Below, in pieces: positions 6,801 to 61,849 of a stretch of 64,000 nt of DNA. The stretch is from NCBI RefSeq assembly GCF_902713615.1, contig NC_052176.1, forward strand, positions 2,418,001-2,482,000, read 5' to 3'. The notes beneath the pieces are model-generated. The model saw only the letters and a list, made by a program, of their open reading frames with translations, was not told the DNA's origin and did not search any database. Numbering within the stretch: position 1 is the first letter of the stretch; the number at the start of each line of letters is the position of its first letter. The position numbers and the translations under genes were made by a program. This DNA is from Scyliorhinus canicula. Its lineage: Eukaryota.

Positions 6801-6804
6801 GGTT

Positions 6805-34449: not shown

Positions 34450-35160
34450 TGAGGGGAACCTCCCTTTATCCAATCAGAGCGCTCCATTTGAGTAAAGGGG
34501 CGGGGAGAGGGACCTTTATCCAATCAGAGCGCTCCATTTGAGAAAGGGGGTGGGGTGAGGAACCTCATCCAATCTGCGCTCGTCCCCTGAGAAAAGGGGC
34601 GGGATAGGAGGTGCCGCCGTCCAATTGGCGCGGTCAGCAGCGAGAGGCGGGGCCAGAAACTCCGCCCCCTCCGCTTCATCCAATCAGCAGCCGGCGCTGG
34701 GTAAAGGCAAGTGGGATTGGCTCACCGCGTCATCCAATCAGCTGCCCTGCGCTGGGTAGCGGCTGGGGGAGTGACCCAACATCTCATCCAATCAGCGACC
34801 TGCGCTCGGTACGGGCAGGGGGAGGACCACCGCCTCATCCAATCAGTGCCCTGCGCTGGGTAGACGCAGGGGGAGACTGGCTGACCGCCTCATCCAATCA
34901 GCGGCCGGTACTGGGTGGAGGCCGAATGGGGGCACCGCCTCATCCAATGAGCGGGTGGTGGAGGGTGTGACTGATGCCATCATCGTCCAATCCGAGTACA
35001 GGGTAGGTGGAGAGAGTGCGCGCGTGGCCGCTCTTTTATCCAATCGGCGCACCGCGGCAGAGGGGGCGGGGAGAGGGGGGGGGCCAGGCCCTCATCCAAT
35101 CGGCGCACCGGGTCTCGAGGAGGGCGGAGCTGGTGACGTCATCCACTTAGCGCGGGCGGC
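34450..35160 (+). promoter_or_regulatory. Promoter of the CENPF-like gene: array of 13 CCAAT (NF-Y) boxes, GC boxes and a CRE
   Basis: CCAAT begins at 34470, 34520, 34569, 34621, 34680, 34734, 34788, 34839, 34894, 34944, 34987, 35040 and 35096. TGACGTCA at 35134-35141. CpG island extends to ~35800. Confidence 0.8.
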
Positions 35161-35203
35161 GGCGGGCGCGAGCTCCGAGTGAGCAAAACAAGACCCCAAC
35201 AGG
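35150..35203 (+). other. CENPF-like: Putative non-coding exon 1 of the CENPF-like gene (start approximate)
   Basis: Donor CAGG|GTGAGT (GT at 35204) just downstream of the CCAAT array. Confidence 0.6.
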
Positions 35204-37039
35204 GTGAGTTCCCGCCTTTCCCTCTCAAACCGTGTGAAGAAAAACAATTTTTAAAGTATTTTTGTTTTCAAAACGCGTTAATTTGACCGTCGGTGAGGAA
35301 ACCGCGGTGGGGGTGGGGGTGGGGGTGGGGGTGGGGGAGGGGCTGCTTTTTAAATGTTTTCACCTCAACGATTTTTTTTTCTGCCGTCAACCGACGGCGG
35401 CGACGACAACCTAACCTGCTGGGCCGGGCGGATTCGGGAAGCCCATTGGCTGGCGGCCGCCCGCCTGTCAATCAAAGAGGGCCACGTGGGAGCCGCTCCG
35501 CCCCCTGCCGGGCAGGTTTGGTTGCGCGGGGCGGAGGGGGCGGGGCCTGTACCCGCCCTCGCCCACACAACGTGGGGAGCCAAAGGCAACAGGGATGTGG
35601 TGGACCGAGGGGCAGCTTGGTGGCCATGCCCGGCCTGGTCGGATAAACCACCCCCTCCCCGCCTCGGGCGTGCCCTGGAAGGATAAATGGGCACGCAGCG
35701 GAGATTTAATCCACTCAGGAAATTAAATCCCCAGTTTGTGGATCCCACGCGGCGCAGGAAGAGGACGTTCATCCCGTCGGGTCTGCGCCGACTCCGTGAA
35801 AGGGCGCCCTGATCCCCCGCCGCCCTATAACCTGCACATCCCTGGACTCTTCAGGGGGAATTTGGTGCGGCCGATCCACCTAACCTGCGCATCTTTGAAC
35901 TTGTGTAGGAGAAAACCAGAGCGCCCGGAGGAAACCCACTTATTGTCACAAGTAGGCTTACATTAACGCTGCAGTTAAGTTACTGGAAAAGCCCCACGTC
36001 GCCACATTCCGGCGCCTATTCGGGTACATGGAGCGAGAATTAAGAATATCCAATTCACCTGACAGCACGTGCACACGCTCCACGGACCGTCGCCAGAATC
36101 AATCCCGGGCCCGTCATTTAAAAAAAAATTTAGTGTACCCAATTCATTTTTACAATTATGGGGCAATTTAGCATGGCGAATCCACCTACCCTGCACATCT
36201 TTGGGTTGTGGGGGCGAAACCCACGCAAACACGGGGGAGAATGTGCAAACTCCACAAGGACAGTGACCCAGAGCCGAGATCGAATCTGGGACCTCGGCGC
36301 CGTGAGGCTGCAGGGCTAACCCACTGCGCCACCGTGCTGCCCTGCAGATAGTATGTTTATATCTCACTGGGTAGCACGGAGGCGCAGTGAGTTAGCATTG
36401 CGGCCTCACGGCGCCCAGGTTATCCTCACTGTCCCAGCGTCCACCGCACTCTGGGGTAGCGAATTCCACGGATTCACAACTCCCTTTTAAATTTGCTACC
36501 TCTTATCCCGAGACTATTACTTCTCGTTCTCGAATGCCCCTCAAGAGGAAGCATCCGCTCCACATCTGCTTTATCTTGTGTATCACAACTTGATCGCCCC
36601 TCATTCTTCTAAACTCTCATCTCTCTTCACAAGATAAAGCCCTCGTCTCTGCTAGTATTTTTCCGACGCTTAGCTGTGCACGAACCCTGATTGTACCTCC
36701 ACACTGTGACCCACCCTCCCTGCCAAATTAGTTCCCCCCCCCCCCCACCCCACCGCGAGGTCCTATTTCAATTCTGGTGCGACCCACATGACTCGTACAG
36801 GTCCCCAGAAATGGACCCGGTGTTCCAGGAAACTAAAGCCGTCCCTCCACCATCTCTTTAGCCACGCATTGATCTGGTCTGTCCTCCTATCCCCACACTC
36901 CCCAACACCTGGCACCGGGTGTAATCCGGAGTTTACAGCCTTCTAGGTCCTGCGGTGTCTTTCCACAGATGCCCGCTCGGGATGTCCCGAAGCACTTTTC
37001 AGCCGATGGAAATTGTAGTCGTCGTTCAAGTGGAGGCAG

Positions 37040-37330
37040 TATGGCAGACAGGAACAGCTTCTTCCCCACAGCTACTAGACTCCTCAACGACTCCCCCTCA
37101 GACTGATTTATTTCCTGTAAGAACACTATTCACAACGCCCTATGGTGCTCTTGCTCATGTATTTGCTTTGTTTGGCCGCTTGTTCCGCACTGTAACCAAT
37201 TACGTATTTGTCGATGTACTTTGTCAATTATTCTTTTGTCTATTGAGTACGTACTTAGTACGTTCCTTTGGTCGCAGAAAAATACATTTCACTGTACTTC
37301 GGTACATTGTGACAGTAAATCAATCAATCA
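37040..37330 (+). mobile_element. Rex1/Babar-like LINE 3' end
   Basis: NSFFPTATRLLN remnant and tail GTGACAGTAAATCAATCAATCA. Confidence 0.65.
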
Positions 37331-37574
37331 GCAGCAAGCCCCCGCAAGCAGCAGAGTGGCAATGGACAGATTTTACCATTGTGATGCAGACTGAGCCATA
37401 AATATTGTCCGGTGCATCAGCGACAGCATCCCTAACCATCTTTTGAAATAGTGCTGGAGGATCTTTTTAGATCTGGTTCAGAGTGCAGATAGGGCTTCAT
37501 GGTGGCGCAGTAGTTAGCACCGCTGCCTCACAGCGCCAGGGACCCAGGTCCAGTTCTTGTCTTGGGTGACTCTG

Positions 37575-38594: not shown

Positions 38595-38756
38595 ATGAGT
38601 TGGGCACCGGAGGAATGGAAATCCGAGCTACCCAGCAGAGCCCTGCAGAAGATCTCCGAGTACGAGAGCCAGCTGGAGAAACTGAAGAAAGAGCGGCACC
38701 AGAAGCAGCTTCAACTGGATAGTTTAGAAGTCACGTTCCAGAAACAGAACCACAAG
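38595..38756 (+). CDS. CENPF-like: CENP-F-like exon 2, start of CDS (MSWAPEEWKSELPSRALQKISEYESQLEKLKKERHQKQLQLDSLEVTFQKQNHK); exon begins at 38560
   Basis: Matches the CENP-F N-terminus MSWALEEWKEGLPTRALQKIQELEGQLDKLKKE. ctcctag| acceptor and AAG|gtgatt donor. Confidence 0.95.
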
Positions 38757-39690: not shown

Positions 39691-39887
39691 CTCGAGGGCG
39701 AACGCAGCGAGAATGCAGCCTTGAGGAGAGAGACGCAGGGCCTGACGGAGGCCCGCAACAGCCAGGAGAAGGCGCAGCAGAGGCTGTGCCACGAGATCCA
39801 GGTGAAGGAGGCCCTGGTTTGCAGCCTGGAGGGGCAGCTGCTGGCCACCAAGAAACAGATCGACGGCCTGGAGCAGGAACTAAAGAG
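39691..39887 (+). CDS. CENPF-like: CENP-F-like exon 3 (LEGERSENAALRRE...HEIQVKEALVCSLEGQL...LEQELKR)
   Basis: tctaag| acceptor and GAG|gtacca donor; 197 nt. Contains the CENP-F N-domain motif HELQVKE...LEGQL...LEQELKR. Confidence 0.93.
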
Positions 39888-40601: not shown

Positions 40602-40717
40602 GCTGGAAGCTGAGCTTGAGCGGAGTCGAAGATCCTCAACCCCTACAGAATGCCAGTTCCACCTTACTCCGGCTAAGACCTACCCTGGGTGTACCACGCT
40701 CAGCAGTGCAAATGAGG
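40602..40717 (+). CDS. CENPF-like: CENP-F-like exon 4 (LEAELERSRRSSTPTECQFHLTPAKTYPG...)
   Basis: tttcag| acceptor and G|gtaagt donor; phases 2 to 1 fit both neighbours. ELERS and TP motifs present. Confidence 0.88.
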
Positions 40718-42603: not shown

Positions 42604-43631
42604 CTAATTTGTAGGGGCTGGAGTCAGTCGGTGACACAGATAGGGAGGAGTGAGGCTATGAACGGCTTGCAAAACCAAGAAGAGAACCTCAAAATCAGGG
42701 CATTACTGGACACGAAAGCAATGTAGCGAGCAGAGGGGTGATTTCTACATGTTGGGTTCAGTACGGAGTGAGGACCAAGAGTTTTAAAACCCCGGAGAGG
42801 GCAAGAGGACATTTCTGCTTGGTACTCCTCGATTTGCCCGAGTCGAGGCGGTGGTTCTCTTGTCTTCTTTCCAACTCCCCAATGACTCCAAAAATCAGAA
42901 TTCAAAATCCTAGCCCCAACTCTGCAACCTTTGACTTGCTGTCTCGGTGTGCAGACAAAGAAAAAAAAAATAACCTGGTACAGTGGGTTAAACATACACT
43001 CTGGCTGCTCATTATACCTTTTAACCCACACCCTGGCTGTTGAGAAATGCAAGATGTGGTGTGTTAACCAGGAACTTTAGCTTTGTAGAAAATGCTGGGA
43101 GTGTCCAGCAGGTGTGGAGGCTGAGTTGTATGTTTATGAGGCAAAAGGGCTGCTTTCCCTCCTAAAGCTTTCTTTCCACTTTCTTTATGAAGATGCCGTT
43201 TTGATTTTGTTTCTGGCAGACCAGTGTGCTGCTGTGGTACCTCTTGGTGTTTGAACCGCTGAATCAGCTTTCCCACCTCAACAGCAGACTGTCTTAACAG
43301 CCCCTGGAAGAACTGACTCTTTGAGTCCCTGCCCCTGACAGGGGTGGGAGAGCTGGAATTACCGGTGTGAATGTCGGGCTGGCTTCAGATTTAGTTCAAA
43401 GATAATTCACTGACTCGAGATATGGGTGCTGCTGTCTTGAAGGCGCTCTCACTGTGCCGCATGGGTAGGGAGCCTGCTAGGGTTTTGCCCCAGCGGCAAC
43501 GGCTGGCATTTCCGTGCTCCTGCGTGTCTTGCCCTTACGTGCACGTGCTGGATGTTGCGGGGTTTCAGGCTGCGGTTCCCAAAATGCCGCTGCAAATTGT
43601 GATGTTTGCCACTCCGTTTTCTGATCTGTAG

Positions 43632-43723
43632 GTTCGAAATGGGACGAGCTGCAAGAAAGGTACAACCGGGAGGTGGAGGAGAAGAAGAGACTAGCCTCTG
43701 AAGTGAAAACTCTGAAGCTGCAG
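43632..43723 (+). CDS. CENPF-like: CENP-F-like exon 5 (GSKWDELQERYNREVEEKKRLASEVKTLKLQ)
   Basis: ctgtag| acceptor and CAG|gtctgt donor. Matches CENP-F SKYEDLKEKYNKEVEERKRLEAEVK. Confidence 0.92.
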
Positions 43724-44064
43724 GTCTGTATGATCTGGAGGTGGGGTGGCATTGTTATCTAATATAGCATTCGGTTCTCGTGCTGACAAGACCATAAGTG
43801 AGAAATTGCAGACGGTATCTATTAATCCCCCGTTATGTCGAGTTTCATTTCAGTTCCCCTGTACTGAGAAAGCAGGTCAGAAATTTCAGAGATGTGAGGG
43901 AGGTTCACCGATGCTGTTCCCGCTTTTCCTTCCCTGTTTGAGGAATGGTTTTCATTCATGTCCACTGTCTACTCTTCAGACCCCCTTCCCCTGCCCCCAC
44001 CCCCCGCCCAATCAGTTTCTCTGCTCCTTACGTCTGCGGGTGCTGCATCTTCTTCAGCACCTTG

Positions 44065-44717
44065 TGTTATGGGCCAGGGTGTAGAAAACTCCAAAGTATA
44101 TCATGGAGTTCACCTGACCTACAACTGTTTATTAATTTTGATTACGAGGAGCTCAAGGGCCTGCCTTTCAGGTGTTATTCAACAGAGGCCTTAAGCACTT
44201 TTACTCAAAAAAGTTTATTCTACAAGTTTAGTTGACATTTTTATGAAAACAAACACAGGCATTTTTATCAACTACCAGCATAAATGTCCCACACAGCTAC
44301 AGTACTCTATATATAACCCGTAATAAATTTCCCCCTTAAACTGTTCCAATTTAATAACAAGATCCCATAAACCAGAAAACTCTTTTCATAGGTGTGGCCC
44401 AGCGCACAGCATTCAGGACCTGGTTTACGGCAGGTTTGAATTCCTTCCAGAAAGCAATTGTTTCTTTTAAGATATCAAGTAGTCTGGAAACAGCTTTCAA
44501 ACTGAAGGTAGCGGGACACTCCACACTACTTGTCTGTCTGAATACAGCAGCCAAGTGTGAAAACGAAAGCAAAATACTCAGAGCCACAAAACAGCCCCAA
44601 ACCCAAAGCGAAAGCAAAACCAACTCCCAGAGCCACAGCCCAGCTGCACCCACACAATGACATCACTGAAGCCATGTGATAAGAGGAAACATTTCTTAAA
44701 GGGACACTGCCGTGACA
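44065..44717 (-). mobile_element. Solo LTR, same family as 888-1574
   Basis: Shares TGTTATGGGCCAGGGT...TCATGGAGTTCACCTGACC...GACA. Confidence 0.75.
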
Positions 44718-45024
44718 CAGTTTTGTGTGTGCATTTGGGTTTGGTGAGTTTAAAAGTTGAGGCTGATCCTCACTCGTAATTCATGCATAGAAATTGGCCG
44801 AGGAAATTTTGTCCCTGACGAGGACACGATGCTGCTTGGCTATGATGCATTCCACAGTGGAATAACCAGTCAACACCCATTGTGGAGACTGGGAAATTTA
44901 CGGCAGGGCTACTATTGCCGTGAGCCCCTCAAGTCAGCACCTTCAGGCTGGGGTAGAGAAGGTTCTCTCGGTCTCCTGTTGCAGCAGAAAGCATGGTTGT
45001 TCACTGAATGTTCTTTGGCCTAAG

Positions 45025-45336
45025 GTTCAACAGTTGCAATTCAGCAGCAACAAGAGCCACCGCGAAAGTGCTCCGCAGCAGATTCGAGCCTCCACGCTTT
45101 CCTGGCAGCCGGAGAAATCGCCCACCCGTGTGCCTGAGAGTCCCGGTGGGCGAGGGCCGCCTTCCTCCGTATTCCCGTGGGAGCCGCCGCGGACGCCTCC
45201 ATACTGCAATTCCAAAAGCCCGCAGCAGACTGACAACAAACCAATCACCTTGGATCGGAGTCCAGGAGCGGCCAACCCGGTCAGCGCCAGGAGCCTGGAA
45301 ATTCGCAACTGCAGGAATTGAGGGACGAAAACCGAG
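45025..45336 (+). CDS. CENPF-like: CENP-F-like exon 6 (VQQLQFSSNKSHRESAPQQIRASTLSWQPEKSP...QELRDENR), with an apparent 1-nt frameshift
   Basis: cctaag| acceptor and GAG|gtatgt donor. The 5' frame gives the HRxxAxxQ..SWQxEKxP motif but stops at TGA 45319. The 3' end QELRDENR is in another frame. Length is 312 nt but 3n+1 is needed. Confidence 0.8.
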
Positions 45337-45829
45337 GTATGTGTGACGCTCCCCTGTTTTATTGCGTTGTCATTTTGATTTCCACTGTCCTCTTCACCTT
45401 GCAGGTTCTGCCCACGTTCCTGCTCAGGCAGTCGGGGGAGGCATCCATAACCTGCGAGGTGCAGCAAGAGATTCCGAGATGGTAGAAACCTGGCACCCAG
45501 AAGGGGCTCAGCCCCGCAGTTTAAAAGCAGAATGTTCTGGAAAACACTTAGCAGGCCTGGCAGCATTGACGGAGAGGGAAAAAAAACGGATTAACGCTGA
45601 CAGTGCAGGTTATGGATACCTTTCCCTGAGGAAGTTGGACATCTATTGGTTTAGAAGCGAGTTCAGAACCCGGTGTGTGTATTGCCATATTTGTGTGAAG
45701 CTGGAGTTGAGAGAATTCATACGATACTTTGCAGAGATGCGGATTGAAGTAAAAGACGGAAGCTGAGTAAATATTGGTTGTCTTAAATTTGGGTGTGCTG
45801 AACATAATGCTTTGACGAAAACAAAGGTA

Positions 45830-46940
45830 TGATAAGCCAAAAGGCATTCGATAAGGTGCCACGATAAGGTCAACAGGCAAGATAAAGGCTCATGGAGCAA
45901 CATGCTAGCGGATTAATTAGCGCGCAGTAAGCAAAGGGTAGGCATAAATGGTGCATTTTCAAGTTGGCAGGCGTTGAACCGTGGAGCGCTGTGAGGATCA
46001 CCGCCCGGGCCTTGGCTGTTTACAAACTATATTGGTGACTTAGATGAAGAGAGCAAGATTAATGTATCTTGCATTTACTGATGATACAGAACTAGATGGA
46101 CAGATGAGCTCGAGGGAAGACACAGAGACGGGTTAAGTGAGTGAGCCGCAAGATGGCAGGTGGAGTATCATGTGGGGAACGTGCAAAGTTATTCATTAGG
46201 GTTGTAAGAAAAGCAGATTTTAAAAGGTGCGAAACTTGCAAGTGATGTTCAGGGAGACTTGGGTGAGCTCGTCCAAGGAATGCAGCCTTAGCATAATGGG
46301 CACACAAGCCAAATAGGAAGGCGAGCGGCAAGTGGGCCTTTATTGCAAGGGGATTGGCGGAGAGGAATGAAGAGGTCTTGCCACAGTTGTACAGGTGTTT
46401 TGGTGAGACCACATCTGGAATACTGGCCGCAGCTTTGGTCTCCACACCTTAAGAATCGGGAGCGGCAGGGCGAAGGTTCAGAGGGTTGGTCCCTGGGTGA
46501 GTGCCTTGTCCTACGATGAGAGGCGGTGTAAATTGGCCCTATATTCTCTGGGAGAAGAATAAGAGGCGATGTGATGTCCTCAATGTACAAGATTCCAAAA
46601 GAGGCTTGACCAGGGTGGATACTGAGAGGTTGTTTTCTCTGGCTGAGGAATCTAGAACTGGGGCACACCCGGAAATGGGGGGGGGGGGGGGGGTCTAATT
46701 TAGGGCCGAGAGGAGGATTTCTTCTGTCGTTTGTGAATCTTTGGAATGCTCTCCTCCAGAGAGTGATGGGTGCTCCATTGGTGAATATATTTAAGGCCAA
46801 GATGGACAGATTGTTGCCCTCAGCGAATCGAGGGATATGGGGGGCAGGTGGGAAAGTGAAGTTGAAGCCCAGGGGCAGCCACATAAGCACTGAGTAGCGA
46901 AGCTGGCTCGACGGCCTGCATGGCCGTCTCCTGCTCCAGT
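45830..46940 (+). mobile_element. Degraded CR1 LINE
   Basis: KAFDKVP remnant at ~45840, LVRPHLEY-like at ~46400, CR1-type 3' UTR. Confidence 0.75.
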
Positions 46941-47125
46941 CTGTCATCTGGTGAAGTTTAAGTTAATTTTTCTTGGAATGTGAAAATAGAGTGCAGGTAG
47001 GTTTCAGATGATGCACAATCTCTTCTACAGAGCCCTTGTTGTTTTGCAGTGTGAAAGACCTTACCGAGTGTGATATATTATTTTTTTAAATGTTTTTACT
47101 TTGCCTTCTCTCTCAATTGTTCCAG

Positions 47126-47328
47126 TGCTGCAGTGTACGATGTCCGAGCTGGAGGTCTGGGTTCAGTCGCAGGAGAAAGAGATTAAAAATCACCTGAACA
47201 AGCTGCAGGAAGTGCAGTCGCTGCTGGAGAAATCCAAAGCAGAGCTGGCGATGAAAGAGCAAGCTCTGAGTAAGAGCAGGGATAACCTAACCAAAGCAAC
47301 AGTGCAGCAGGAGCAGACCAGGAACAAG
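47126..47328 (+). CDS. CENPF-like: CENP-F-like exon 7 (VLQCTMSELEVWVQSQEKEIKNHLNKLQEVQSLLEKSKAEL...)
   Basis: ttccag| acceptor and AAG|gtttgg donor. Coiled coil resembling CENP-F ELELRLQGHEKEMKGQVNKFQELQ. Confidence 0.92.
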
Positions 47329-47767
47329 GTTTGGACCCCACCCCCATTCCCATGATCTCTGAGCACAATCCCGTTTGTATAAAGCACAAGGGGGCTGGTG
47401 CGAATGGGTGATTTACAGCATTAAATACTGGGCTTCAATCTCTGGGATCTCTATTCAACGCCAGTTTATATATTCAATGGGATAAAAATCTTCCCTCCCT
47501 GTCCCCTCCATTTGTTGCTGCAGGAATTATTTACAAAATGAGCTTGGCACAGCCTCGACGCAGTTATTTGTGATGGTGGAGACTCGCGTCAGCTGTTGGC
47601 GATCTCTGTAGGCGAAGCCACCGGAAAAGTAATTGCAAAGTGTTGTGCGGTTACAGTAGGGGAGACTCTTTGGACGTTGGGGCTTTATTTTGGTAAAGCA
47701 GAAGGAATTGCACTCTGCGTGTGGTTTGTGCTCTGTCTCATTCAACTGAAGATCTTTGATGTGACAG

Positions 47768-48302
47768 AATAGAGGGAGCTTTATTCTGTATCTAACCCTG
47801 TGCTGTACCTGTCCTGGGAGTGTTTGATGGGGATAGTGTAGAGGGAGCTTTATTCTGTATCTAACCCGTGCTGTACCTGTCCTGGGAGTGTTTGATGGGG
47901 ACAGTGTAGAGGGGGCTTTACTCTGTATCTAACCCCGTGCTGTACCTGTGCTGGGAGTGTTTGATGGGGACAGTGTAGAGGGAGCTTTACTCTGTATCTA
48001 ACCCCGTGCTGTACCTGTCCTGGGAGTGTTTGATGGGGACAGTGTAGAGGGAGCTTTACTCTGTATCTAACCCCGTGCTGTACCTGTCCTGGGAGTGTTT
48101 GATGGAGACTGTGCAGAGGGAGCTTTACTCTGTATTTAACCCCGTGCTGTACCTGTCCTGGGAATGTTTGATGGGGACAGTGTAGAGGGAGCTTTACTCT
48201 GTATCTAACCCCGTGCTGTACCTGTCCTGGGAGTGTTTGATGGGGACAGTGTAGAGGGAGCTTTACTCTGTATCTAACCCCGTGCTGTACCTGTCCTGGG
48301 AG
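47768..48302 (+). repeat. 69-bp satellite array (~7.7 units) AGAGGGAGCTTTACTCTGTATCTAACCCCGTGCTGTACCTGTCCTGGGAGTGTTTGATGGGGACAGTGT
   Basis: Visible tandem; gives the 23-aa periodic ORF 47850-48305. Confidence 0.95.
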
Positions 48303-48376
48303 CATTATTATTAAAAATTATGTTCTGATATGACAAATATCGGGTTCTGATGTTCGTGATTTATTTTTATTGCTAG

Positions 48377-48502
48377 TGTTCACTTCTGGAGCAGAAGCTG
48401 AAGCAGGTTTCCGAGGACCTGAACTGTCAAAGGCAGAATGCAGAAAGTGTCCGACGCCTGATGGAGCAAAAGTCTAAGGAAAAGGAGAAAGAATACCAGC
48501 AG
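48377..48502 (+). CDS. CENPF-like: CENP-F-like exon 8 (CSLLEQKLKQVSEDLNCQRQNAESVRRLMEQKSKEKEKEYQQ)
   Basis: tgctag| acceptor and CAG|gttagg donor. Contains the LEQKLK..EDLxCQRQNAES motif. Confidence 0.95.
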
Positions 48503-48909
48503 GTTAGGGTGGTGGTGGGGGGGTCACTAGCACAAATGCATTCACTAATCCTTCCATTGCTGATCACACTCCTGCAGTGCACTGCAATTGTCACCACTTT
48601 GCGAGCTCTTCATTTCGCTCAAGTGTATCCATTTTAAGTTGAGAGCCAGTGCCGCCTCACTCGGGTTCAGGAGCTGGCTCCCGGACTGCAATTGGGTTTT
48701 TTCACAACGGAATGGACTCCGTAATACACGGCCTGTGGGGACGTGTACTCTGGACTGCTGTCAGAAGTGTGGTAAATGCATTATCAATGCTGGCAGCTTG
48801 CCCGCTCGGGTGACCCGCACCCAGGAGGCTGGAGTTTGCCTCCTGTGATAGGGTGCACCTTTTATGCGTCACACCAATTCTATTGCTTGGTGTTTTCATT
48901 TGTGGTGAA

Positions 48910-49197
48910 TGTAATATATATATGATATGATAATTCACACTGTCTTTGTAAGCGCAGTAGCGCTATCCTATCACTAGGGGGAGTAGCTCTGGGAGTACTC
49001 AGGAACTTGTACTGGGCTCCACCCTTGGCTCCGCCCACGACTCCTCCCTGTAGTGCAGCTGTATAAATACCCTTGCCCAGAGTCAGCCTGAGTTCACTAA
49101 GAGTTCATCAACGGGTAACAGGCTGGCTCTGAAGTAAGTCGATTAAAGCCTAGATTCATATCGGAAACACGTGTCTGGTGAACTGATGGTTCCATCA
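48910..49197 (+). mobile_element. Small solo LTR
   Basis: TGTAAT...CCATCA termini, TATAAA at ~49063, ATTAAA at ~49142. Confidence 0.6.
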
Positions 49198-49276
49198 GTG
49201 TTAATTGCAGAAATGTTAACAGGCGAATGACCATGCAAAGGTGTCTTTGTGGTTTTCTCCCTCGCTGATTTTGTAG

Positions 49277-49405
49277 GACCTGTCGGACCAGCAACGTGCG
49301 TACCGGAACCTGGAACATCAGTGCAAGCAAGAGAAAAACCAACTAAACCAGGAGATCCAGAAGCTCAAGTCTGAACACCTGGCGTTGCAGTCTGCAGTCG
49401 ACAAA
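49277..49405 (+). CDS. CENPF-like: CENP-F-like exon 9 (DLSDQQRAYRNLEHQCKQEKNQLNQEIQKLKSEHLALQSAVDK)
   Basis: ttgtag| acceptor and AAA|gtaagt donor; 129 nt in frame. Confidence 0.92.
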
Positions 49406-49602
49406 GTAAGTGAAGCTAAGGTGACTGAAATCGCACAATGGGCAGATTGATTCTCAGCTGGCATTTAAAGAAGGAGCTTCGTGATCAGGGTCACTTTTTT
49501 TTTAAATGAGTGAGTCAGTCTCTTAAAGCGGGGCTTCCATTCAGCTGGTTGTGGGTTTTTTGTGTCTCTTCGCTGAGTTTGAGGGGAAGCTCAATGATAT
49601 TC

Positions 49603-52236: not shown

Positions 52237-52359
52237 ATGGCAACTCGGAAGCAGCTGGTGGACAGGGAGCTGGAGGAAGTCAAAGCTAATTTTCACTGCG
52301 CAGAGAAGGAACTCGAAAGCCGCCAGAGGAAAGGGGACACTCTGCAGAAAAGTCTCCAG
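52237..52359 (+). CDS. CENPF-like: CENP-F-like exon 10 (MATRKQLVDRELEEVKANFHCAEKELESRQRKGDTLQKSLQ)
   Basis: tgacag| acceptor and CAG|gtgatg donor; 123 nt coiled coil. Confidence 0.9.
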
Positions 52360-53678: not shown

Positions 53679-53814
53679 GAAGCGTTGAAGGAGAAAGACA
53701 ACTTCAGTACCTGGCAAACCCAAAGCACTCAGAGAACCACGCACCTGGAAGCGAAGCTGAAAAGACTGGAGAAAGAGCTAACTCTGAATCAGAGATCGAG
53801 AGAAGAAATGAAAG
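53679..53814 (+). CDS. CENPF-like: CENP-F-like exon 11 (EALKEKDNFSTWQTQSTQRTTHLEAKLKRLEKELTLNQRSREEMK)
   Basis: ctttcag| acceptor and AAG|gtcagg donor; 136 nt, phase 0 to 1. Confidence 0.9.
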
Positions 53815-54411
53815 GTCAGGGCTCTTACTGTCCTGGTTATTCCTGATGTATGTTGTCCCCTAGTGAAGTTGTTGTCGAAGAGTAACAGTGCTAAACGCTG
53901 GGCCCTCAGCTTGAGGTGAATGTCAGGCTCACTTCCCGAATGCCGAATAAAATGACAGATAGTTAGCTTTGTGCTGTGCCTTCTGGTCTCCCACAGGCCA
54001 CCGTTTGGAGGTTCCGTCCTGTCGCATTGGGATAGGACAGGATAGACCTCTGAATGGGTGCGAGCAAGGCAGTCTGCCCATTAACACGCCGACACTATCT
54101 GACTTTCCGGACTCTCCTCTGTTTGCACAACGGGAGTAGGCCTGTGTCCTTTGTCAATTGAGAAAAGTGGAAAAATTGGGCTTGTTAAGCAGCCTTTCAG
54201 TGTCAGGAGACTGAATCATGGGATGTCTCTCTGACAATTAACAGTGCGTTCACAAGCTTACTGACCCACTGACCGATTATAGTGATCGTTTGGGCAATGC
54301 AAAGTCCAATGCTATGGCAGTAAGGGCAGGTGATAAAGGATCGTTATTGCTATTCTGACTCTGGGCATCATTGCCATATACAACCTTAAACGTGTATTGT
54401 TTCAATTTTAG

Positions 54412-57374
54412 CTGAGAACCTGATTCTTGCAACCAAACTTAAAGATCTTCAACAGGATCATGAGTTCCAACCGAACTCCGGGAATGCGGATCTTGCAGCG
54501 TTGGTGTGCGAATTGACTAAGAAGGATCGTAATGAGATCGACAAGTGTGAACCGGACGAAGACAGCCATCAGTCAAACAATGTGCAGTCTGTCGGAATGG
54601 CGACAGTTGTAGGGTGGCCGGTGAAGGTCAGAGAGGAGGAAATGTTGGATTCAGTGGAAGGAAGTCAACTTGGAGAATTGATGGTGACGTCTGTCCTCTC
54701 AGACCAAGACAGTGAGGCCAACCTCGAGGAAGACTCAAGTTTTACCACCAAAGTAAAATTGGAAGTTGTGCCAAGTGGAGCATTGACAGAAACCCGCGGC
54801 TCGGAAGAAGCAAGGGACGTGTTCTCAGATCCCGAAGAGAAAACGGGGGCGCAGCCCCACGGCTTTGAGAAAGAAACTGAGGAAGCAGGTGGGGCAGAAG
54901 CTGCGGTTGCACCTGGTGACCACACAGAGAAGGGCGAGGCAATGATTGACTGGCTTGACAAACCAATCACCGCGTCCTGGCATTTCGGAGGACGCGAGGT
55001 GGAATTGGACGAAGTAAAAACAAAAAATCAGATGCTACAGCAAGAGCTGGATGAGCTGAAACAAACGCTTGACAGTAAAGTGATTGAAGACCAGAGAAAC
55101 CAGCAGACTGTTGCAGAACTGAGGCGGAAGCTAAAGCAGGTGATGCAAAGGAACGCCGCAGAGGCCGAGTCCCCCACTGCACTGGTCACTTTGCAGGCAG
55201 GGCAAATCAGTGCCCTGGAAAAAGACCTGGAGCACGAGAGAACCAAGGTGGCCAAAATGCAAGAGAGCAATAAGATACTGGAGCTGGAATGCAGCAAAGT
55301 ATCCGAGCTTGCTAGAACCAGAGATGCCGGATCAGACGGCGATGAAATTCAGATCCTGCAGAGTGCTGCGTCTAAGAAGATGCAACAGCTTGAGCAACAG
55401 ATTGTGGAACTTAACTGTGAGAAGAGTTGCATTGAGGAGATCATAAAGGCAAATGGCCGGCTGGACGTTGTTGCTGCCGCGGACGAGAGGGGGGACCTTC
55501 TTCTGGAATGTCTGGAGCACGAAGATGTCCGAAACCTCGAATTTGACGCAATGCCTTCAAACCATCTGTGCTGCGACCCGGGAGAAATGCTGGGGCGGAA
55601 GCTGGAGGAGGAGAAAACCCGTTTTGTGGAGATCATGAAGGGGGGCGACGGAGGCGGCCAAGGGAAAGGCAATCGAGAGCTCTTGTTCGAGTACTTTAAG
55701 CACAAGGTGGTCGAGCAACTTGAGTTTGACGAACGGCTGCTGGAGCATCAGAAACTCCTGGGTGAACTTCAGAAAATGTGCGACGAGCTGGCGGCAGGGA
55801 AGGAGCAAGAAGAGCAAGCGAAAAGGCAGGCGCAGGAGAGGTTTGACCATCTGCAGGCCAGAATTCACCGGGAGACACAGCAGTTAACAGTGGCGCTGGA
55901 AGTTCAAAGTAAGAACATTGAGGGACTTCTCCTGAGCATGGAAGAGAAGGACCACACCATTCAGGTTTTAAATGAACGCCTGCAAGATGCTTCAACGGTG
56001 CTGATACGCCTCCAGAAAGAGAATTGCGAGCTGAAAGCTAACTGTGAGACAGTTTGGGAAACATCCACGCAGAAGTGCGTCGACAATGCAGGTCTCCCCG
56101 AGGATATCGTGCTGGGGCAACCCAGTGGTGCACCGTCCCCTCAGGCCAAACGACATGAAAATGGTGGCCTGCTGTCCATGGGCGGGCGAGCCCTCACAAT
56201 CGAGGGAAGGCCTGCTGATGGGACCGTCCAAAATTCAGAGACCGGCTACGATGAAAACGTGTGTGATAACTCGTTGCTCCTACCTATTGAGCAGGCAATC
56301 CGTTTGATTCTGACCCAGGAGGATCAATTCAAAGAACCAGAGGAGCGCGGTTCTGCTGTCAGGAAGATGCCAGAACTGAACGAGGACCCTGCTAAACAGG
56401 AGCAGCAGACAACAAAAATCGAAGCCAGCCGCTGTGAGGCATCGCCAATCGGACCAAAGGAGCAGAGGGCAAGCTCTGTCCCATCTACCAGCGCTCCCTC
56501 GGGCAAATCAGGGATTACCTCTGCAGTTATTTGTGCGCGACAGAATATTCAGCTGACGCAGAACGCTGAAAGCCTACGGCCGCGTAAGGAGCAGAATGAT
56601 GTGGCGGGCAATGACGCCGATCAGAGACAGAGCATCAGATGTCCTGGTGGTTTGCAGATGAAGATCGGCGAGCTGCAGGAGGAGTCGGTGAGCCTACACA
56701 CCAAGACATCCCCGGGCGAAGCTGAAACACCGACTGAGAAGGGAACAACGGAAACTGCCGACTCTAAATTTGCTCTGGTTTTAGGAGAAAAGCAGTCAGT
56801 TGGTGAATTGAGAACCGAGGCAGAGCTGATTGAAGAAGTGGAAAGGGTGACTGGCAGATTTAATGAAGCCTTAAAGGTCTCAGAAGAGGAACGCCAAAAG
56901 ACAGAAGAATCAAACCAGAAAGTGGTTGGCGCTTTGAACGAAGAATTGAACTCCTTGCACAAAAGATGCACGATTCTGGAACAAGAGAGGGAGTGTCTCT
57001 GTGCGGAAGTCCGGAAAGCCCAGGAGGCAGCCGGCGAAATGCAGTACGAGAAAGAAGGCTTAATGGAGGCAATCCAATCCAGCGAGGCTCTGCTGAGAGG
57101 GAGCACCGAAGAGAAAAACCACCTGGAGCGAGAGTTGGAGGCCCTGCGAGAGTGGAGGCAGAAGGGCCTGGGAGACGGCCCTCCCCGGCAAGCTGGAGAG
57201 GAAAGCGGCCAGGAGGAACGGCAAGCATTGCGGGGGACGCAGGACCAAATGCTGGAGCTGGAGGACAAATGCAGGGCGTTGAACAGCGAGGTGGCGAGTG
57301 CAAAGCTCACCCAGGAGCAGATTCAGGAAGAGTTGGAGAAAGCCCAGACTGAGAAGTCTGAGCTACAGTGCCAG
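54412..57374 (+). CDS. CENPF-like: CENP-F-like giant exon 12 (~988 codons; acidic low-complexity and coiled-coil segments)
   Basis: ttttag| acceptor, phase 1, continuing into the 977-aa ORF 54501-57434. CAG|gtactg donor. Open for 2.96 kb. Confidence 0.92.
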
Positions 57375-58427
57375 GTACTGTACAGTTTTGTTCTCCCTTT
57401 TATTTATCCGGATTCTCCCACTATATTTTCCTGAAGGGGCCTAACGTTGCAGGGCTCTGACTCCATGCATGGATATGCCCAGGGTTTAAGCGAGGCCGTT
57501 TCCGTCCCCTGTTCTGCTTCATAGCAGAAAGCCTTGTATTTACACAGCACCATTCCATGACCAGGATGGCTCAAAGACTTTTATTTACAGCCAGTGTAGT
57601 GTAGGAAATGTTAGTATATTTATTATCCTACCTGCCTCCACTTTTCACGTGACTGGTTTGCATTGCCCTGGGGTTGAGTCGAAAGTCCTTTTGAGATCAG
57701 TCTGGGATCTGGGGGATCTTGAGGGTTGGGGTTTGGTCGCATCTGGACTGTCTCTGGGAGTCTTGCAACAGACGGCGCAGGGCAGTAGTTGTTACCACCT
57801 TTATAAATTTTAATTAATTTTACATCACGTTGGAAGAGTTTATAGAACCACCAAACGTGTCTATATTTAGACAATTCTGCGCAGTAATGAGGGACATTAA
57901 AATAAGGACCCATTCACCCTCTCACTCAGTGAAAGGTCCCTCTGCACTGTTTTGTAAAGAATATAACAGCCATCCCTCGTGCCCTGGTCAATAATTAACC
58001 CTCTGGTACCATCACAGTGATCTAATTATTTGCTGTTTGTGGGGGCTTGACATTAACAACTTGGCTGCCGCGTTACAATGGCGACAATTACTTCATTGAC
58101 TGTAAACTCCTTTGGAATGTCTTTTTTAAAATTATTCATTCATGGAATGTTGGCGTCCCTGGCTGGGCCAGAATTTGTTGCCCATCCCTAACTGCTCCTT
58201 GAACTGAGCTGCCAGGCATTAAGAGTCTACCTTGTTGCTGTGGATTTGGAGCCACATGTAGGCCAGGCCGAGTAAGGGAGGCAGATTTCCTTTGTGAACC
58301 AGGTGGGTTTTTAATGAAAATTGACCCAAGTGCTTTCATGGACATCGTTAGATTTTAAATTCCAGGTTTTTATTGAATTTAAATTACACAAGCTACCGTG
58401 GTGGGATCCGAACCCGGGTCGCCAGAG

Positions 58428-58725: not shown

Positions 58726-59459
58726 CCCTAGGTCTGTGAATTACTAGTCCTGGGGTAATAATACTCCCCCATCACCTTCCTTATGGTCATGAAAGGTGCT
58801 TTATAAATGCTGGCCATTTCATTCTCCAAAGCAAATTTTTGTTCAAAGTTTCATTATACGGTTAAACCATTTAGTACTTCAAAAGAGCGGGGCGACTTAG
58901 CTTCTCGTGTGGACATTCCATCTGCACAATTGTGATTATGACTTTTTAAAATCCCATATCAAAATGTGAACCGCCTTCCATCTCTCTCCACCCTCCCTTT
59001 TTCTCCCCCACTGAAATCTTCTCCAGCTCCCGGATAGCCAAACCCATGGTTCCATTCTTTGTGTGTGCGATGGCCGACGGGACAATATCAGTACGACATT
59101 GTGACTGGTTGCTGTCACAGCTGACTGTGCACCCCATCTCACTGATCCTCCCAGCCAGGCAGCAATTATGAGGTGAAATTCTGACCTGATTTCCCCTCCC
59201 TCCTGGAGAGGCACTGAGGACAGATTAGTTCCTTGGCTTCTCTGCTGTTGAGCTCTGCCAACTGGGCAAAAGGCCTGAAATTGAAAGCTCTCTGGTGCCT
59301 GTGACTCGGTTCCACCCTGACACACCCACTAGCTGAAGCGCCAGAGCCTTTTTTTTGCTCTGTATGCGTATGCTTCTCCAAGTCATGCTTCCAGTCCATG
59401 CAAAAATAATACACAAGAAGTAGGTGCACATTTATCACCCGTTCGAATGGTGCTTGCAG

Positions 59460-59619
59460 GTTGACCGTCTGCAGAAAGTAGCTGCCGAGCTGGACAGAGA
59501 AAAGATGGAACTGCAAGCCAAATTGAAGCAGTCAGAGAGGAGCCCTGTAGGCAAGGAGGAGATTCTGCACGAGAATGGCCTTCCTGAGGACCACCTGCCC
59601 ATCGGCAGCCAGCAGCTAG
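59460..59619 (+). CDS. CENPF-like: CENP-F-like exon 13 (VDRLQKVAAELDREKMELQAKLKQSERSP...)
   Basis: ttgcag| acceptor and TAG|gtaccg donor; phase 0 to 1 bridges exons 12 and 14. Confidence 0.85.
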
Positions 59620-61277
59620 GTACCGTGTGAATGACCTGTCATACATTATTATTCCTCATCAATTTGGTGGTGGCAGCTATTGTGTAGGAAGGCGGCGGGC
59701 TTTCGGAAACTTTGGGATCTCCCATTTACTGGAGGATTCTCCTTTCATTTGCAGACGGTCAACAGGCCATTTGTTTCAGCACGATTCGCCACTCTTCAGC
59801 TACATGTCCAAATACAGAAAGACCTGGACAATGTCTGGGCTGACAGGTGGCAAGTAACATTAGCACCACACCCAAGTGCCAGGCAATGGCCATCTCCTAT
59901 AGAACTAGGCCAGTCATATAAATACTGTGGCTACAAGAGGAGGTCAGAGGCTGGGAATCCTGCAGAGAGTAACTTGCCCCCTGACTCCCCTCCCCAAAGC
60001 CTGCGAGGCACAAGTCAGGAGTGCGCTGGAATAAGTGTTTGCTTTTGTGACTGATATTGTAAGAGGGTGAGCCTACGTCGCGATAGCTGAATGCTGTCTG
60101 CGTGCCAAATTCCCCTCCCCCTCAAGAACGTGAGTATGTAACTAGGTGAATACCTCTGCATTGAGAGAGTGTTTCATCGTGAGAGGTGCAGCTTTTCAGG
60201 CCCCCGTTTGTTTAAGGAGGGGCATTGCACAATTCGCATGTAGCTGTGCCAGTGTCTGGCCAACTTCCATCCGTCAGCTAACGTTGCTGAAAGTCAGCAT
60301 TGCTGCCACTTCTGGTTCCTTGCACCAGCCCGAAATGAGCTGCAGTGTTTGTCTACATAACAGTGCTAACTGCCTCTCCTAAAGTAATCGACTGTCAACC
60401 AAGTTAGAACAAACCCCCCCCCCCCAGTGAGTCCTGCCTGCAATTTGTCCCGTTCTCCTCCAGTTTGCCTCTGTACCAGGCCAATAGTTATTGAATAGGA
60501 AACTAGTCGAGACGTTTCTGAAGGAGGGTGATGGCAATACCGTCCTTGGGTACAGGCAGCTTGAACTGGTTCCTGAAAGTCACACCTTAAGTTCAAACTT
60601 TGTAAGTCGGAAGCGATTTTCCCAGAGGAACTAATGTACAGGTTGGGGAGGGGGGGAATTGTTCCTGATCCAAGGAAAGAAATCAGCCACGGGGCGCCCG
60701 GCGGATTTGAATGCTCTCAACTCCTTGCCCTGTCAACTCGCTGAGGTGACTGTTGATTGCCGCATGTCTCAGCACAAGTTCCTCGTTTCGCGTGGGGGAT
60801 ATAACAAAGCAGTTCTATTAGTCAGTTGCCAATTTAGCCATGAACGTGTGCGAGTCTGAGCGCTTATTAAAAACAACACAAGTGCATAAATGCATTTGGT
60901 TGTGCCAAAACAATTTAAAAGAATAAAACACCCGTTTCCAACCTAATAAAGCGGGTTCAACTAGTCCAGCTATGCAGAGGGGTGGCGCTAAACGTCAATG
61001 AACGCTATAAAGTCAAGATGGGGTGACGGTATACAAATGTAAGTGCCGTTCATCGTATCTCGAACGTCATAAAGCCAAGGACTGTCTATATTGTGAATTA
61101 GTAAATTCTCGTGTGCACTTCATTTTCGCACGAGTTCTTTGCACCTGTGGTGAACATGATGAAACATACATCAACTGCAAAATGGAAACCGAAACAAATT
61201 CTCATTAAGTTCTTTCCCATGGGGATTTAACCTGTCAGAAGGATTTTATAACGGAAAATTCTTGCTTTTCCTTTCAG

Positions 61278-61799
61278 CTCCGGCGCAAATCACAGCAAGG
61301 AAGCTGGGGGCTGACCTGGAAGCTTTGAGACAAACCCTTCAAGAGAAAAGTGAAGAGGTTGATCGCAATCTGTTCAACTTTTCCGACCTGGAGAACAAGC
61401 GTCAAGAGCTACAGGCTGCCAACAAGATCCTGTTTAAAGCTGTCAATCACCTTCATCAATGCAAGGCTAAAACTCTCAACGGTGACCCATTGAATGCCGT
61501 AGGTTCGGACCCACAGACCCCGACTGAAGATGGGAAGCCAGTCGCTAGACAGACGATTGGCAGAGAGCCTGCCCAGGCAGGTGAACGGGACCAGACTAAG
61601 ACCAACCTGAGGTCAAAGGGGCGCTCTGATCTTGCAGGACGCTTACCGAGGTTAAATCCTGCAGAGCTCATGATGAAGATCAGTGCCGCTGATCTCGCTA
61701 CTCGAATACAACGGAATCGGCAATTCAGGCATCACCTGTCTGTGGCGTTTGATGAAACAGAGTACGAACCATACGGACTGCCTGATGTGGTGCAAAAGG
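61278..61799 (+). CDS. CENPF-like: CENP-F-like exon 14 (...LQEKSEEVD...HHLSVAFDETEYEPYGLPDVVQKG)
   Basis: ctttcag| acceptor and AGG|gtaggt donor. EYEPYGLPDVVQKG matches the CENP-F C-terminal EFEPEGLPEVVKKG motif. The gene continues past the window. Confidence 0.92.
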
Positions 61800-61849
61800 G
61801 TAGGTTGCGAGCCTCGTTTCAGGGCATGCACGGCACAGTGTTGGAAACA

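What the first reader, a model, noticed from the sequence alone, without database searches (positions are those of the whole stretch)
35150..61799. Compact second CENP-F paralogue linked to GPR137 (possible whole-genome-duplication ohnologue absent from mammals)
Seen: CENP-F-type N-terminal exons, one 2.96-kb exon, two further exons, then the C-terminal EYEPYGLPDVVQKG motif at only about codon 1750. Known: human CENP-F is ~3100 aa and lies on 1q in the same region as GPR137B, while GPR137 is on 11q13 with no CENPF neighbour that I know of. Inference: this is a separate, roughly half-length CENP-F ohnologue that kept both terminal domains but lacks much of the central coiled-coil/repeat region. 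That would make it a largely uncharacterised kinetochore or microtubule-linker protein.
Basis: partly seen in the sequence, partly recalled or inferred. Interest (0 to 1): 0.75.

Follow-up and report, generated by a model that had tools for sequence, protein, structure and literature searches.

The report
Shorter second CENP-F gene in catshark
The small-spotted catshark carries, beside its normal 3,400-residue CENP-F, an intact and transcribed 1,782-residue sister gene that arose before sharks and bony vertebrates split; it survives in sharks, rays, ray-finned fishes, salamanders and caecilians, was not found in mammals, and has never been studied.

Summary
The window is Scyliorhinus canicula chromosome 31. 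It holds 13 of the 14 coding exons of the gene RefSeq calls "centromere protein F-like" (CENPFL). The last exon lies 3 kb past the window.

- **Two loci.** The canonical CENPF (3,411 aa) lies on chromosome 1, next to KCNK2.
- **Truncated RefSeq model.** The 1,484-aa model comes from a 1-nt deletion in the assembly. Spliced transcript contigs from four studies all carry the missing A. With it the protein is 1,782 aa and has a full CENP-F N-terminal domain.
- **Age.** In a rooted ML tree, elasmobranch CENPFL groups with short CENPF-like proteins of bichirs, sturgeons, teleosts (zebrafish name si:dkeyp-115e12.6), salamanders and caecilians. That clade is sister to all gnathostome CENPF. An AU test rejects a shark-only duplication (p = 5e-6).
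- **Block duplication.** Ten exon sizes match between the two genes. Neighbours are paralogous: RD3–CENPF–KCNK2 against RD3-like–CENPFL–KCNK4-like in carp, and GPR137–CENPFL–RBM4 in shark.
- **Architecture.** CENPFL keeps the N-terminal microtubule-binding region and an invariant Miro-binding motif. It lacks the leucine-zipper repeats and the CaaX tail.

The function is inferred, not shown. The gene is annotated in databases, but I found no paper that characterises it.

The parts
11144..11479 (+). Exon of the upstream neighbour, a GPR137-family gene (context, not part of CENPFL)
   Evidence: One search finds 67% and 59% identical paralogous exons at C6:179.74 Mb and C2:56.63 Mb. One search shows that each of those two lies about 40 kb from an ERO1 gene, as human GPR137B and GPR137C do. 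By elimination this copy is GPR137 proper. The family assignment rests on my recollection of the human GPR137B sequence; Pfam has no model for it.
34463..35141 (.). Array of about 50-55-bp units, each with a CCAATCAG box, followed by a TGACGTCA site. Putative promoter.
Evidence: Its role as the CENPFL promoter is inferred from position only.
35150..35205 (+). Putative non-coding first exon
   Evidence: A CAG|GTGAGT donor lies at 35205/35206. Transcript contigs extend 49-91 nt upstream of the ATG. The join itself was not observed.
38595..38756 (+). Coding exon 1 (ATG; 162 nt)
   Evidence: PF10481 positions 1-55 at 78 bits.. The size equals CENPF exon 1 on C1.
39691..39887 (+). Coding exon 2 (197 nt)
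   Evidence: PF10481 positions 54-122 at 74 bits. AG/GT boundaries and the same size as in CENPF.
40602..40717 (+). Coding exon 3 (116 nt)
43632..43723 (+). Coding exon 4 (92 nt)
   Evidence: Its splice to exon 5 is seen in contigs of 4 runs. Same size as in CENPF.
45025..45336 (+). Coding exon 5. The reference lacks one A after 45237, giving an apparent frameshift.
   Evidence: Searches show the frame change. In one search all four runs, at 100% of depth, have an A inserted behind 45237. With it the ORF is continuous.
47126..47328 (+). Coding exon 6 (203 nt). The RefSeq model starts at the ATG at 47140.
48377..48502 (+). Coding exon 7 (126 nt)
49277..49405 (+). Coding exon 8 (129 nt)
52237..52359 (+). 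Coding exon 9 (123 nt). It is skipped in one Mustelus isoform.
53679..53814 (+). Coding exon 10 (136 nt)
54412..57374 (+). Large exon 11 (2,963 nt). Fast-evolving central coiled coil with one conserved block near residue 1021-1050.
59460..59619 (+). Coding exon 12 (160 nt)
61278..61799 (+). Coding exon 13 (522 nt). It ends in the CENPFL-specific block and the first half of the Miro-binding motif (...EYEPYGLPDVVQKG). The final exon (FADIPSG...stop) is outside the window at equivalent 67066-67172 (L018:3066-3172).

Best explanation
**What it is.** This is CENPFL, an intact, transcribed, 14-coding-exon paralogue of CENPF that encodes 1,782 residues.

**Origin.** It arose with its neighbours by a block duplication before the last common ancestor of jawed vertebrates. 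One of the two early vertebrate whole-genome duplications is the most likely source. It has been kept in elasmobranchs, non-teleost and teleost ray-finned fishes, salamanders and caecilians. It is not found among annotated proteins of amniotes, frogs, coelacanth or chimaeras.

**How it likely works (inferred).** It is a parallel coiled-coil dimer.

- Its first 550 or so residues correspond to the microtubule-binding N-terminal region of CENP-F.
- Its last 70 or so residues carry an invariant copy of the CENP-F motif that inserts into the ELF pocket of the mitochondrial GTPase Miro.
- It would therefore link Miro-bearing mitochondria, and possibly other cargo, to microtubules in dividing cells.
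- It lacks the CENP-F modules for Nde1/Ndel1 binding (leucine-zipper repeats), the basic C-terminal microtubule-binding tail and the farnesylated CaaX end.

**Shown versus inferred.** Gene structure, transcription, orthology, age and domain content are shown here. Microtubule binding, Miro binding and cell-cycle role are inferred.
For: - **Identity and second locus.**
- **Transcription and intact frame.** One search shows GT..AG joints for exons 4-5-6-7-8 in contigs from 4 studies. It also shows contigs of 3.3 and 6.9 kb, and an extra A at 45237 in all four runs. One search gives the 1,782-aa ORF.
- **DNA-level duplication.** Exon sizes are 162, 197, 92, 203, 126, 129, 123 and 136 nt in both genes.
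- **Age.** In the careful ML tree the CENPFL clade (elasmobranch plus bony) has support 97/98 and the CENPF clade 98/98. Both repeat the species tree inside. The AU test rejects a single chondrichthyan clade (delta lnL 83, p = 5e-6).
- **Shared derived C-terminus.** All CENPFL share the same C-terminal block and none has CaaX. All canonical proteins, and the crinoid outgroup, end in CxVQ or CKIQ.
- **Synteny.** Shark C1 has RD3 (248.3 Mb), CENPF (252.8 Mb), KCNK2 (253.5 Mb) and a nuclear-receptor gene (255.5 Mb). Carp has STX5, RD3-like, CENPFL and a KCNK4-like gene within 38 kb. Sole has STX5, RD3-like and CENPFL. Shark and Hemiscyllium have CENPFL followed by RBM4.
- **Function.**
  - N-terminal residues 1-555 are 42-43% identical to CENPF residues 1-550.
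  - The residues that PMC10897228 reports as contacting Miro (F2989, D2991, I-L-R 3001-3003) are all present in GFADIPSG...ILRR.
  - This block is the best-conserved part of the protein, at 61-67% identity to bony-vertebrate CENPFL against under 15% in most of the centre.
Against: - No experiment or structure prediction of binding was possible here.
- The outgroup branches are long, and the lamprey sequence is placed only weakly (81/65). The duplication therefore cannot be assigned to 1R or 2R, and the root is soft.
- L and B are both fast-evolving, so long-branch attraction between them is conceivable. The shared C-terminal block and the 11q13-type neighbours argue against it.
- KCNK4, ESRRA and STX5 were not detected on shark chromosome 31. 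The shark locus itself therefore shows only GPR137 and RBM4 as 11q13 markers.
- Absence from amniotes, frogs, coelacanth and chimaeras rests on annotated proteins only.
- The one zebrafish mention (a G2/M module) is probably an orthology-converted human gene list, not an expression measurement.
Confidence: 0.8

Rival explanations
1. A lineage-specific (elasmobranch or chondrichthyan) duplicate of CENPF that shortened afterwards. On this view the resemblance to the short bony-fish proteins is convergent or a long-branch artefact.
For: In sequence searches started from the shark protein, only elasmobranch proteins appear as close relatives, followed by a sharp drop to canonical CENPF. No chimaera CENPFL was seen. 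Both short-protein groups have long branches.
Against: The AU test rejects one chondrichthyan clade (p = 5e-6). Elasmobranch and bony CENPFL share a specific C-terminal block upstream of the Miro motif and the same truncation point without CaaX. Both lie among 11q12-13-type genes: GPR137 and RBM4 in shark, STX5 and KCNK4-like in carp.
Confidence: 0.04
2. A decaying pseudogene or N-terminally truncated gene. On this view the frameshift in exon 5 is real, and only the 1,484-aa product of the RefSeq model, without the CENP-F N-terminal domain, is made.
For: The reference sequence has the frame break. RefSeq models the protein from the exon-6 ATG.
Against: Contigs of four runs from four studies all carry the extra A at 100% of depth and splice exon 4 to 5 to 6. 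Exons 1-5 have no other stop. The N-terminus is 80-90% identical among elasmobranchs. Full-length models exist in 10 or more other species.
Confidence: 0.03
3. An ancient paralogue produced by a small segmental duplication before the gnathostome ancestor, not by whole-genome duplication.
For: Only three paralogous neighbour pairs were shown here (RD3, CENPF, KCNK). GPR137B/C and CENPF are on different shark chromosomes. The lamprey placement is unresolved.
Against: Human 1q32-41, 11q12-13 and 14q share many further gene families: KCNK2/4/10, ESRRG/A/B, GPR137B/-/C, MARK1/2/3 and PTPN14/21. This is established knowledge and was not tested here. It is the pattern expected from the vertebrate genome duplications. 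The neighbours found here fit that pattern.
Confidence: 0.1
4. The gene is the same ancient paralogue, but the protein works mainly as a second kinetochore-corona or nuclear-envelope protein, redundant with CENP-F. On this view the conserved C-terminal motif serves another partner, for example Rb, as the Pfam name suggests.
For: CENPFL residues 1583-1773 align at 32% identity with the human region that spans the end of the BUB1-binding coiled coil and the motif. The promoter-like CCAAT array is typical of G2/M genes.
Against: The segment before the motif is poorly conserved among CENPFL. Farnesylation contributes to CENP-F kinetochore recruitment (PMC6028960), and the CaaX box is absent. The residues kept invariant are exactly those reported to contact Miro.
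Confidence: 0.25

Closest known systems
CENP-F / mitosin / LEK1 (canonical CENPF; here S. canicula protein P0132 on chromosome 1)
   Same: - Full CENP-F_N domain (PF10481).
- 42-43% identity over the first 550 or so residues.
- Collinear C-terminal coiled coil.
- PF10490 motif with the Miro-contact residues.
- Identical sizes for eight of the first ten coding exons.
   Different: - About half the length (1,782 against 3,411 aa).
- No PF10473 leucine-zipper repeats, which form the Nde1/Ndel1-binding region.
- The central 725 or so residues are unrelated in sequence.
- The protein ends about 20 residues after the motif, so the basic C-terminal tail and the CaaX farnesylation box are missing.
- It has its own conserved block just upstream of the motif.
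Zebrafish si:dkeyp-115e12.6 and RefSeq 'centromere protein F-like' of bichir, sturgeon, teleosts, caecilian and salamanders
   Same: - Same clade in the tree (97/98).
- Same C-terminal signature and the same lack of CaaX.
- Similar length, mostly 1,400-2,200 aa.
- 11q12-13-type neighbours.
   Different: - Only 25-60% identity in the conserved N-terminal windows, and almost none in the centre.
- Immediate neighbours differ: STX5, RD3-like and KCNK4-like in carp, against GPR137 and RBM4 in shark.
- No functional paper was found for any of them.
Miro clients with an ELF-pocket motif (CENPF, TRAK1/2, MYO19; PMC10897228)
   Same: A conserved Phe next to an Asp, followed by an I-L-R strand, in a short conserved segment at the end of a coiled-coil protein.
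   Different: Binding has not been tested for CENPFL. The other clients are motor adaptors or motors, whereas CENPFL would bind microtubules directly.

Membership tests
CENP-F family | N-terminal CENP-F_N domain (PF10481) | tested here: met
   Exons 1-2 score 78 and 74 bits in the genome scan. Full-length orthologues match positions 1-304 at 265-286 bits. The reads-corrected catshark ORF has the same N-terminus.
CENP-F family | C-terminal PF10490 motif (Rb-binding / Miro-binding segment) | tested here: met
   73 bits in the catshark protein. The motif is split over exon 13 and the final exon.
CENP-F family | Internal leucine-zipper tandem repeats (PF10473) | tested here: not met
   There is no PF10473 hit in any of the three CENPFL tested, whereas Callorhinchus CENPF scores 110 bits. 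The precomputed domain lists agree.
CENP-F family | C-terminal CaaX farnesylation box | tested here: not met
   All CENPFL end without CaaX. The canonical proteins checked, from human to a crinoid, end in C-x-V/I-Q; the one exception was an alternative-isoform catshark model.
CENP-F family | Common descent shown by collinearity and shared intron positions | tested here: met
   Collinear BLASTP segments at both ends. Equal exon sizes for exons 1, 2, 4 and 6-10.
CENP-F family | Kinetochore recruitment through BUB1, and microtubule binding | not testable with these tools
   Only weak sequence alignment to the BUB1-binding coiled coil.
Vertebrate whole-genome-duplication ohnologue pair | Duplication node older than the shark/bony-vertebrate split | tested here: met
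Vertebrate whole-genome-duplication ohnologue pair | Paralogous neighbours around both copies | tested here: met
   RD3 and KCNK2 flank CENPF on shark C1. RD3-like and KCNK4-like flank CENPFL in carp. GPR137 and RBM4 flank it in shark. Only a few genes were examined.
Vertebrate whole-genome-duplication ohnologue pair | Timing relative to cyclostomes and assignment to 1R or 2R | tested here: inconclusive
   The single partial lamprey protein joins the canonical clade at 81/65 only.
Miro ELF-pocket clients | Conserved Phe/Leu with an adjacent acidic residue and a downstream beta-strand, in a conserved segment | tested here: met
   G-F-A-D-I-P ... I-L-R-R is invariant or near-invariant in all CENPFL. 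The criteria come from PMC10897228.
Miro ELF-pocket clients | Physical binding to Miro | not testable with these tools
   No Miro sequence could be obtained for a complex prediction.

The most novel reading that the evidence does not exclude
CENPFL is the dedicated mitochondria-to-microtubule (Miro-binding) member of the pair. After the duplication the two jobs of the ancestral protein were partly divided between the copies. Where CENPFL survives, canonical CENP-F is free to lose the Miro motif. This appears to have happened in skates (segment absent) and rays (degenerate). Amniotes lost CENPFL and had to keep both jobs in one 3,100-residue protein. If so, fish and shark CENPFL give a natural separation-of-function allele for the poorly understood mitochondrial role of CENP-F. 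Zebrafish CENPF disease models would also be buffered by a hidden paralogue.
Probability: 0.25. Interest if true: 0.65.

Novelty: new member of a known kind. Interest (0 to 1): 0.5.

Why it matters
CENP-F is studied almost only in mammals, which have a single gene. There, its kinetochore, nuclear-envelope, dynein-regulating, ciliary and mitochondrial roles are hard to separate.

- **Natural experiment.** A conserved half-length sister protein keeps only the N-terminal microtubule-binding region and the Miro motif. That shows which modules can work on their own.
- **Zebrafish models.** Zebrafish work on CENPF, including models of human CENPF ciliopathy and microcephaly, should take the paralogue si:dkeyp-115e12.6 into account, because it could compensate.
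- **Genome evolution.** This is a clean example of an ohnologue lost from amniotes, with the ancestral position next to GPR137 and KCNK4 still recognisable.
- **Annotation.** The catshark RefSeq model is truncated by a single-base assembly error and can be corrected.

Tried and rejected
- **Atlas search.** A protein-atlas search with the GPR137 exon gave nothing useful. Pfam has no model for it.
- **11q13 markers in the shark genome.**
  - Scans for Menin, BAD and the Syntaxin-5 N-peptide found nothing. The Menin scan ran on a reduced filter, so these blanks say nothing.
  - PLC-beta_C, K2P and nuclear-receptor scans found no member on chromosome 31. KCNK4, ESRRA and PLCB3 could therefore not be placed beside the shark gene.
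- **Neighbours in other species.** Look-ups for Amblyraja and one Solea isoform found no record. Those for Narcine, Gouania, Erpetoichthys and Rhinatrema returned no neighbouring genes within 10 kb. tblastn of the shark GPR137 and RBM4 exons against the fetched fish and ray loci found nothing.
- **Literature.** Searches for a CENPF ohnologue, for 'centromere protein F-like' and for si:dkeyp-115e12.6 found no paper on the gene. The only mention is a G2/M gene list that looks like a converted human list.
- **Cysteine test.** I checked whether a cysteine needed for mouse and human CENP-F kinetochore targeting is kept. It is not conserved even in chimaera CENPF, so it is uninformative (read by eye, not a tool result).

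Full report
**Where we are.**
- The window is G000:C31:2418001-2482000 of a 4.22-Gb genome. Protein matches identify the species as Scyliorhinus canicula.
- The largest open frame of the region (54390-57431) is 100% identical to a RefSeq protein named 'centromere protein F-like', 1,484 aa, on a 12.1-Mb contig.

**Checking the observation.**
- Stop-to-stop frames on the + strand show a series of CENP-F-like pieces starting with MSWAPEEWK at 38595. The motif EYEPYGLPDVVQKG starts at 61760.
- I mapped the catshark, Mustelus and Heterodontus proteins onto the DNA, refined the splice sites, and threaded the RefSeq protein exactly. This gives 13 coding exons in the window. One of them is 2,963 nt (54412-57374), and the last one in the window ends at 61799.
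- The gene continues beyond the window. A PF10490 hit and the reading frame place the last coding exon (FADIPSG ... KSV, stop) at window-equivalent 67066-67172.
- The protein has no CaaX box.

**A frame break that is not real.**
- Relative to the Mustelus protein, the catshark reference changes frame inside exon 5 near 45237. This explains why RefSeq starts its model at an ATG in exon 6 and why that model lacks the N-terminal domain.
- I laid contigs of four public runs from four different studies on 43500-49499. Every run has an extra A behind 45237 at full depth.
- The same contigs join exons 4-5-6-7-8 at GT..AG borders. They are up to 3.3 and 6.9 kb long, with 616-658 nt lying upstream of exon 5. 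That length is what exons 1-4 plus a short 5' UTR require.
- With the A restored, the ORF is uninterrupted and encodes 1,782 residues. The gene is therefore intact and transcribed. The spliced form shows that these contigs come from RNA.

**A second, full-length CENPF exists.**
- Scanning the whole genome with PF10481 and PF10490 finds a better-scoring locus at C1:252,805,916-252,921,021.
- Mapping the chimaera CENPF onto 140 kb of that region shows all N-terminal exons, two large exons and the C-terminal exons. A three-exon block also appears repeated.
- RefSeq has a 3,411-aa 'centromere protein F' on that contig.
- All 13 elasmobranchs for which both proteins turned up have both a 3,100-3,600-aa CENPF and a CENPFL model of 1,300-1,840 aa.
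- Eight of the first ten coding exons have identical sizes in the two catshark genes. The duplication was therefore at the DNA level, not by retroposition.

**How old is the duplication?**
- Searches started from the shark protein found close relatives only in elasmobranchs.
- An exhaustive HMMER search with the chimaera N-terminus recovered a further set of proteins, 33-44% identical and mostly 1,400-2,200 aa.
- Their records name them 'centromere protein F-like' or si:dkeyp-115e12.6. They come from reedfish, sturgeon, many teleosts, a caecilian and two salamanders. Several of these species also have a canonical CENPF.
- The same search supplied a lamprey protein and a crinoid, a spider and a copepod as outgroups.
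- I built an ML tree of the first 620 or so residues (56 sequences, LG+C20 PMSF). It has a canonical CENPF clade (98/98) and a CENPFL clade (97/98).
- In the CENPFL clade, elasmobranch sequences are sister to bony-vertebrate sequences. Amphibians and ray-finned fishes are arranged there as in the species tree.
- Forcing all chondrichthyan sequences together costs 83 log-likelihood units (AU p = 5e-6).
- All CENPFL share a block upstream of the motif and the same end point without CaaX. The canonical proteins checked and the crinoid protein end in C-x-V/I-Q, apart from one alternative-isoform catshark model.
- No protein with the CENPFL signature in the inspected hits came from an amniote, frog, coelacanth or chimaera. 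This is absence among annotated proteins, not proof of loss.

**Synteny.**
- *Upstream of the shark gene.* A GPR137-family exon lies in the window (11144-11479). It has two paralogues elsewhere, each next to an ERO1 gene, as human GPR137B and GPR137C are (my knowledge). The window copy is therefore GPR137 proper.
- *Downstream of the shark gene.* The next gene is an RBM4-family gene; its best solved relative is RBM4B (E = 2e-20). Hemiscyllium has the same CENPFL-to-RBM4-type order. Both neighbours correspond to human 11q13.
- *Bony fishes.* In carp the CENPFL orthologue lies between STX5 and an RD3-family gene on one side and a K2P channel 4.6 kb away on the other. The first exon of that channel is most like KCNK4. 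Sole shows STX5, RD3-like and CENPFL.
- *Canonical gene.* The shark CENPF lies between the only RD3 gene detected (4.5 Mb upstream) and a KCNK2-type channel (0.6 Mb downstream). A nuclear-receptor gene lies further on, as in human 1q32-41.
- *Conclusion.* RD3/CENPF/KCNK2 and RD3-like/CENPFL/KCNK4-like form a duplicated block. This fits the well-known 1q/11q13/14q paralogy (established knowledge) and hence a whole-genome duplication.
- *Weak points.* I could not place KCNK4, ESRRA or STX5 on shark chromosome 31. GPR137B/C are not on the CENPF chromosome in the shark.

**What the protein keeps and loses.**
- Pfam finds the full CENP-F_N domain and the C-terminal PF10490 motif, but no leucine-zipper repeats.
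- BLASTP shows collinear similarity at residues 1-555 (42-43%) and from about 1280 to 1773 (23-32%). Nothing significant lies between.
- Conservation among CENPFL is high at the N-terminus, in one central block (1021-1050) and, most of all, in the last 70 or so residues.
- That last segment contains G-F-A-D-I-P ... I-L-R-R. PMC10897228 reports that CENPF F2989, D2991 and I-L-R 3001-3003 are the contacts with the ELF pocket and GTPase-1 strand of Miro. All of them are kept.
- PMC6028960 places the CENP-F microtubule-binding sites in the first 385 and last 187 residues. It also notes that farnesylation contributes to kinetochore recruitment. CENPFL has the first site but not the second, and it cannot be farnesylated.

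**Most likely mechanism (inferred).** CENPFL is a coiled-coil dimer that binds microtubules with its N-terminus and Miro with its C-terminus. I estimate about 55-60% that both bindings hold. A kinetochore or nuclear-envelope role remains possible.

**Novelty.**
- The gene is present in RefSeq and Ensembl-type annotation under generic names.
- The library holds no paper that describes a CENPF paralogue or studies si:dkeyp-115e12.6. The one mention is in a G2/M list that probably derives from human CENPF by orthology.
- The finding is therefore a real, ancient and uncharacterised member of a known family. It is of moderate rather than high surprise, because ohnologues lost from amniotes are common.

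Noticed in passing
G000 genome-wide; examples L003 (C6:148755270-148758830), L007 (C15:94321177-94324557), L008 (C9:34179575-34182913): About 120 dispersed PF10481 hits with stops are copies of a repeat of 1.5 kb or more. The repeat carries an intronless piece of the CENPFL mRNA (CDS nt about 103-560, spanning exons 1-4). It is 76-79% identical in DNA, and 61-67% identical in protein to CENPFL against 37-40% to CENPF. A mobile element seems to have captured a spliced CENPFL fragment and amplified it.
   Followed up: partly
window 45237-45238: The reference assembly lacks one A (AAA instead of AAAA) compared with transcript contigs of four studies. This single base truncates the RefSeq protein model from 1,782 to 1,484 aa and removes its CENP-F_N domain.
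   Followed up: yes
window 34463-35141: Tandem array of about 50-55-bp units, each with a CCAATCAG box, ending in a TGACGTCA site just before a putative non-coding exon. It is the likely CENPFL promoter, and CCAAT boxes are typical of G2/M genes. It was already noted by the scan as s1-240215.
   Followed up: partly
Proteins P0158, P0151 (skates), P0139-P0141 (rays), P0053 (Callorhinchus); alignment: The canonical CENPF models of skates lack the segment GFADIP...LRRTT. Those of rays have it degenerate. The chimaera has Ser in place of the key Phe. Shark CENPF and every CENPFL keep it. This could be division of labour between the paralogues, or skipped exons in the models.
   Followed up: partly
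G000:C1:252883500-252907600 (L024, L033, L025, L034): In the canonical CENPF gene, a block of three exons (chimaera residues about 2472-2627) appears two to three times in tandem. This may explain why elasmobranch CENPF is 3,200-3,600 aa long.
   Followed up: no
window 61800-62310: Directly after exon 13 the same frame stays open through a tandem repeat that encodes variations of ...SPSNTPRTGTARG.... It lies in the intron and is not in the RefSeq protein.
   Followed up: no
window 5200-7550 and 7556-8055: A G+C-rich minisatellite open in several frames on both strands, followed by a 500-N gap that was left untouched. It lies upstream of the GPR137-family gene.
   Followed up: no
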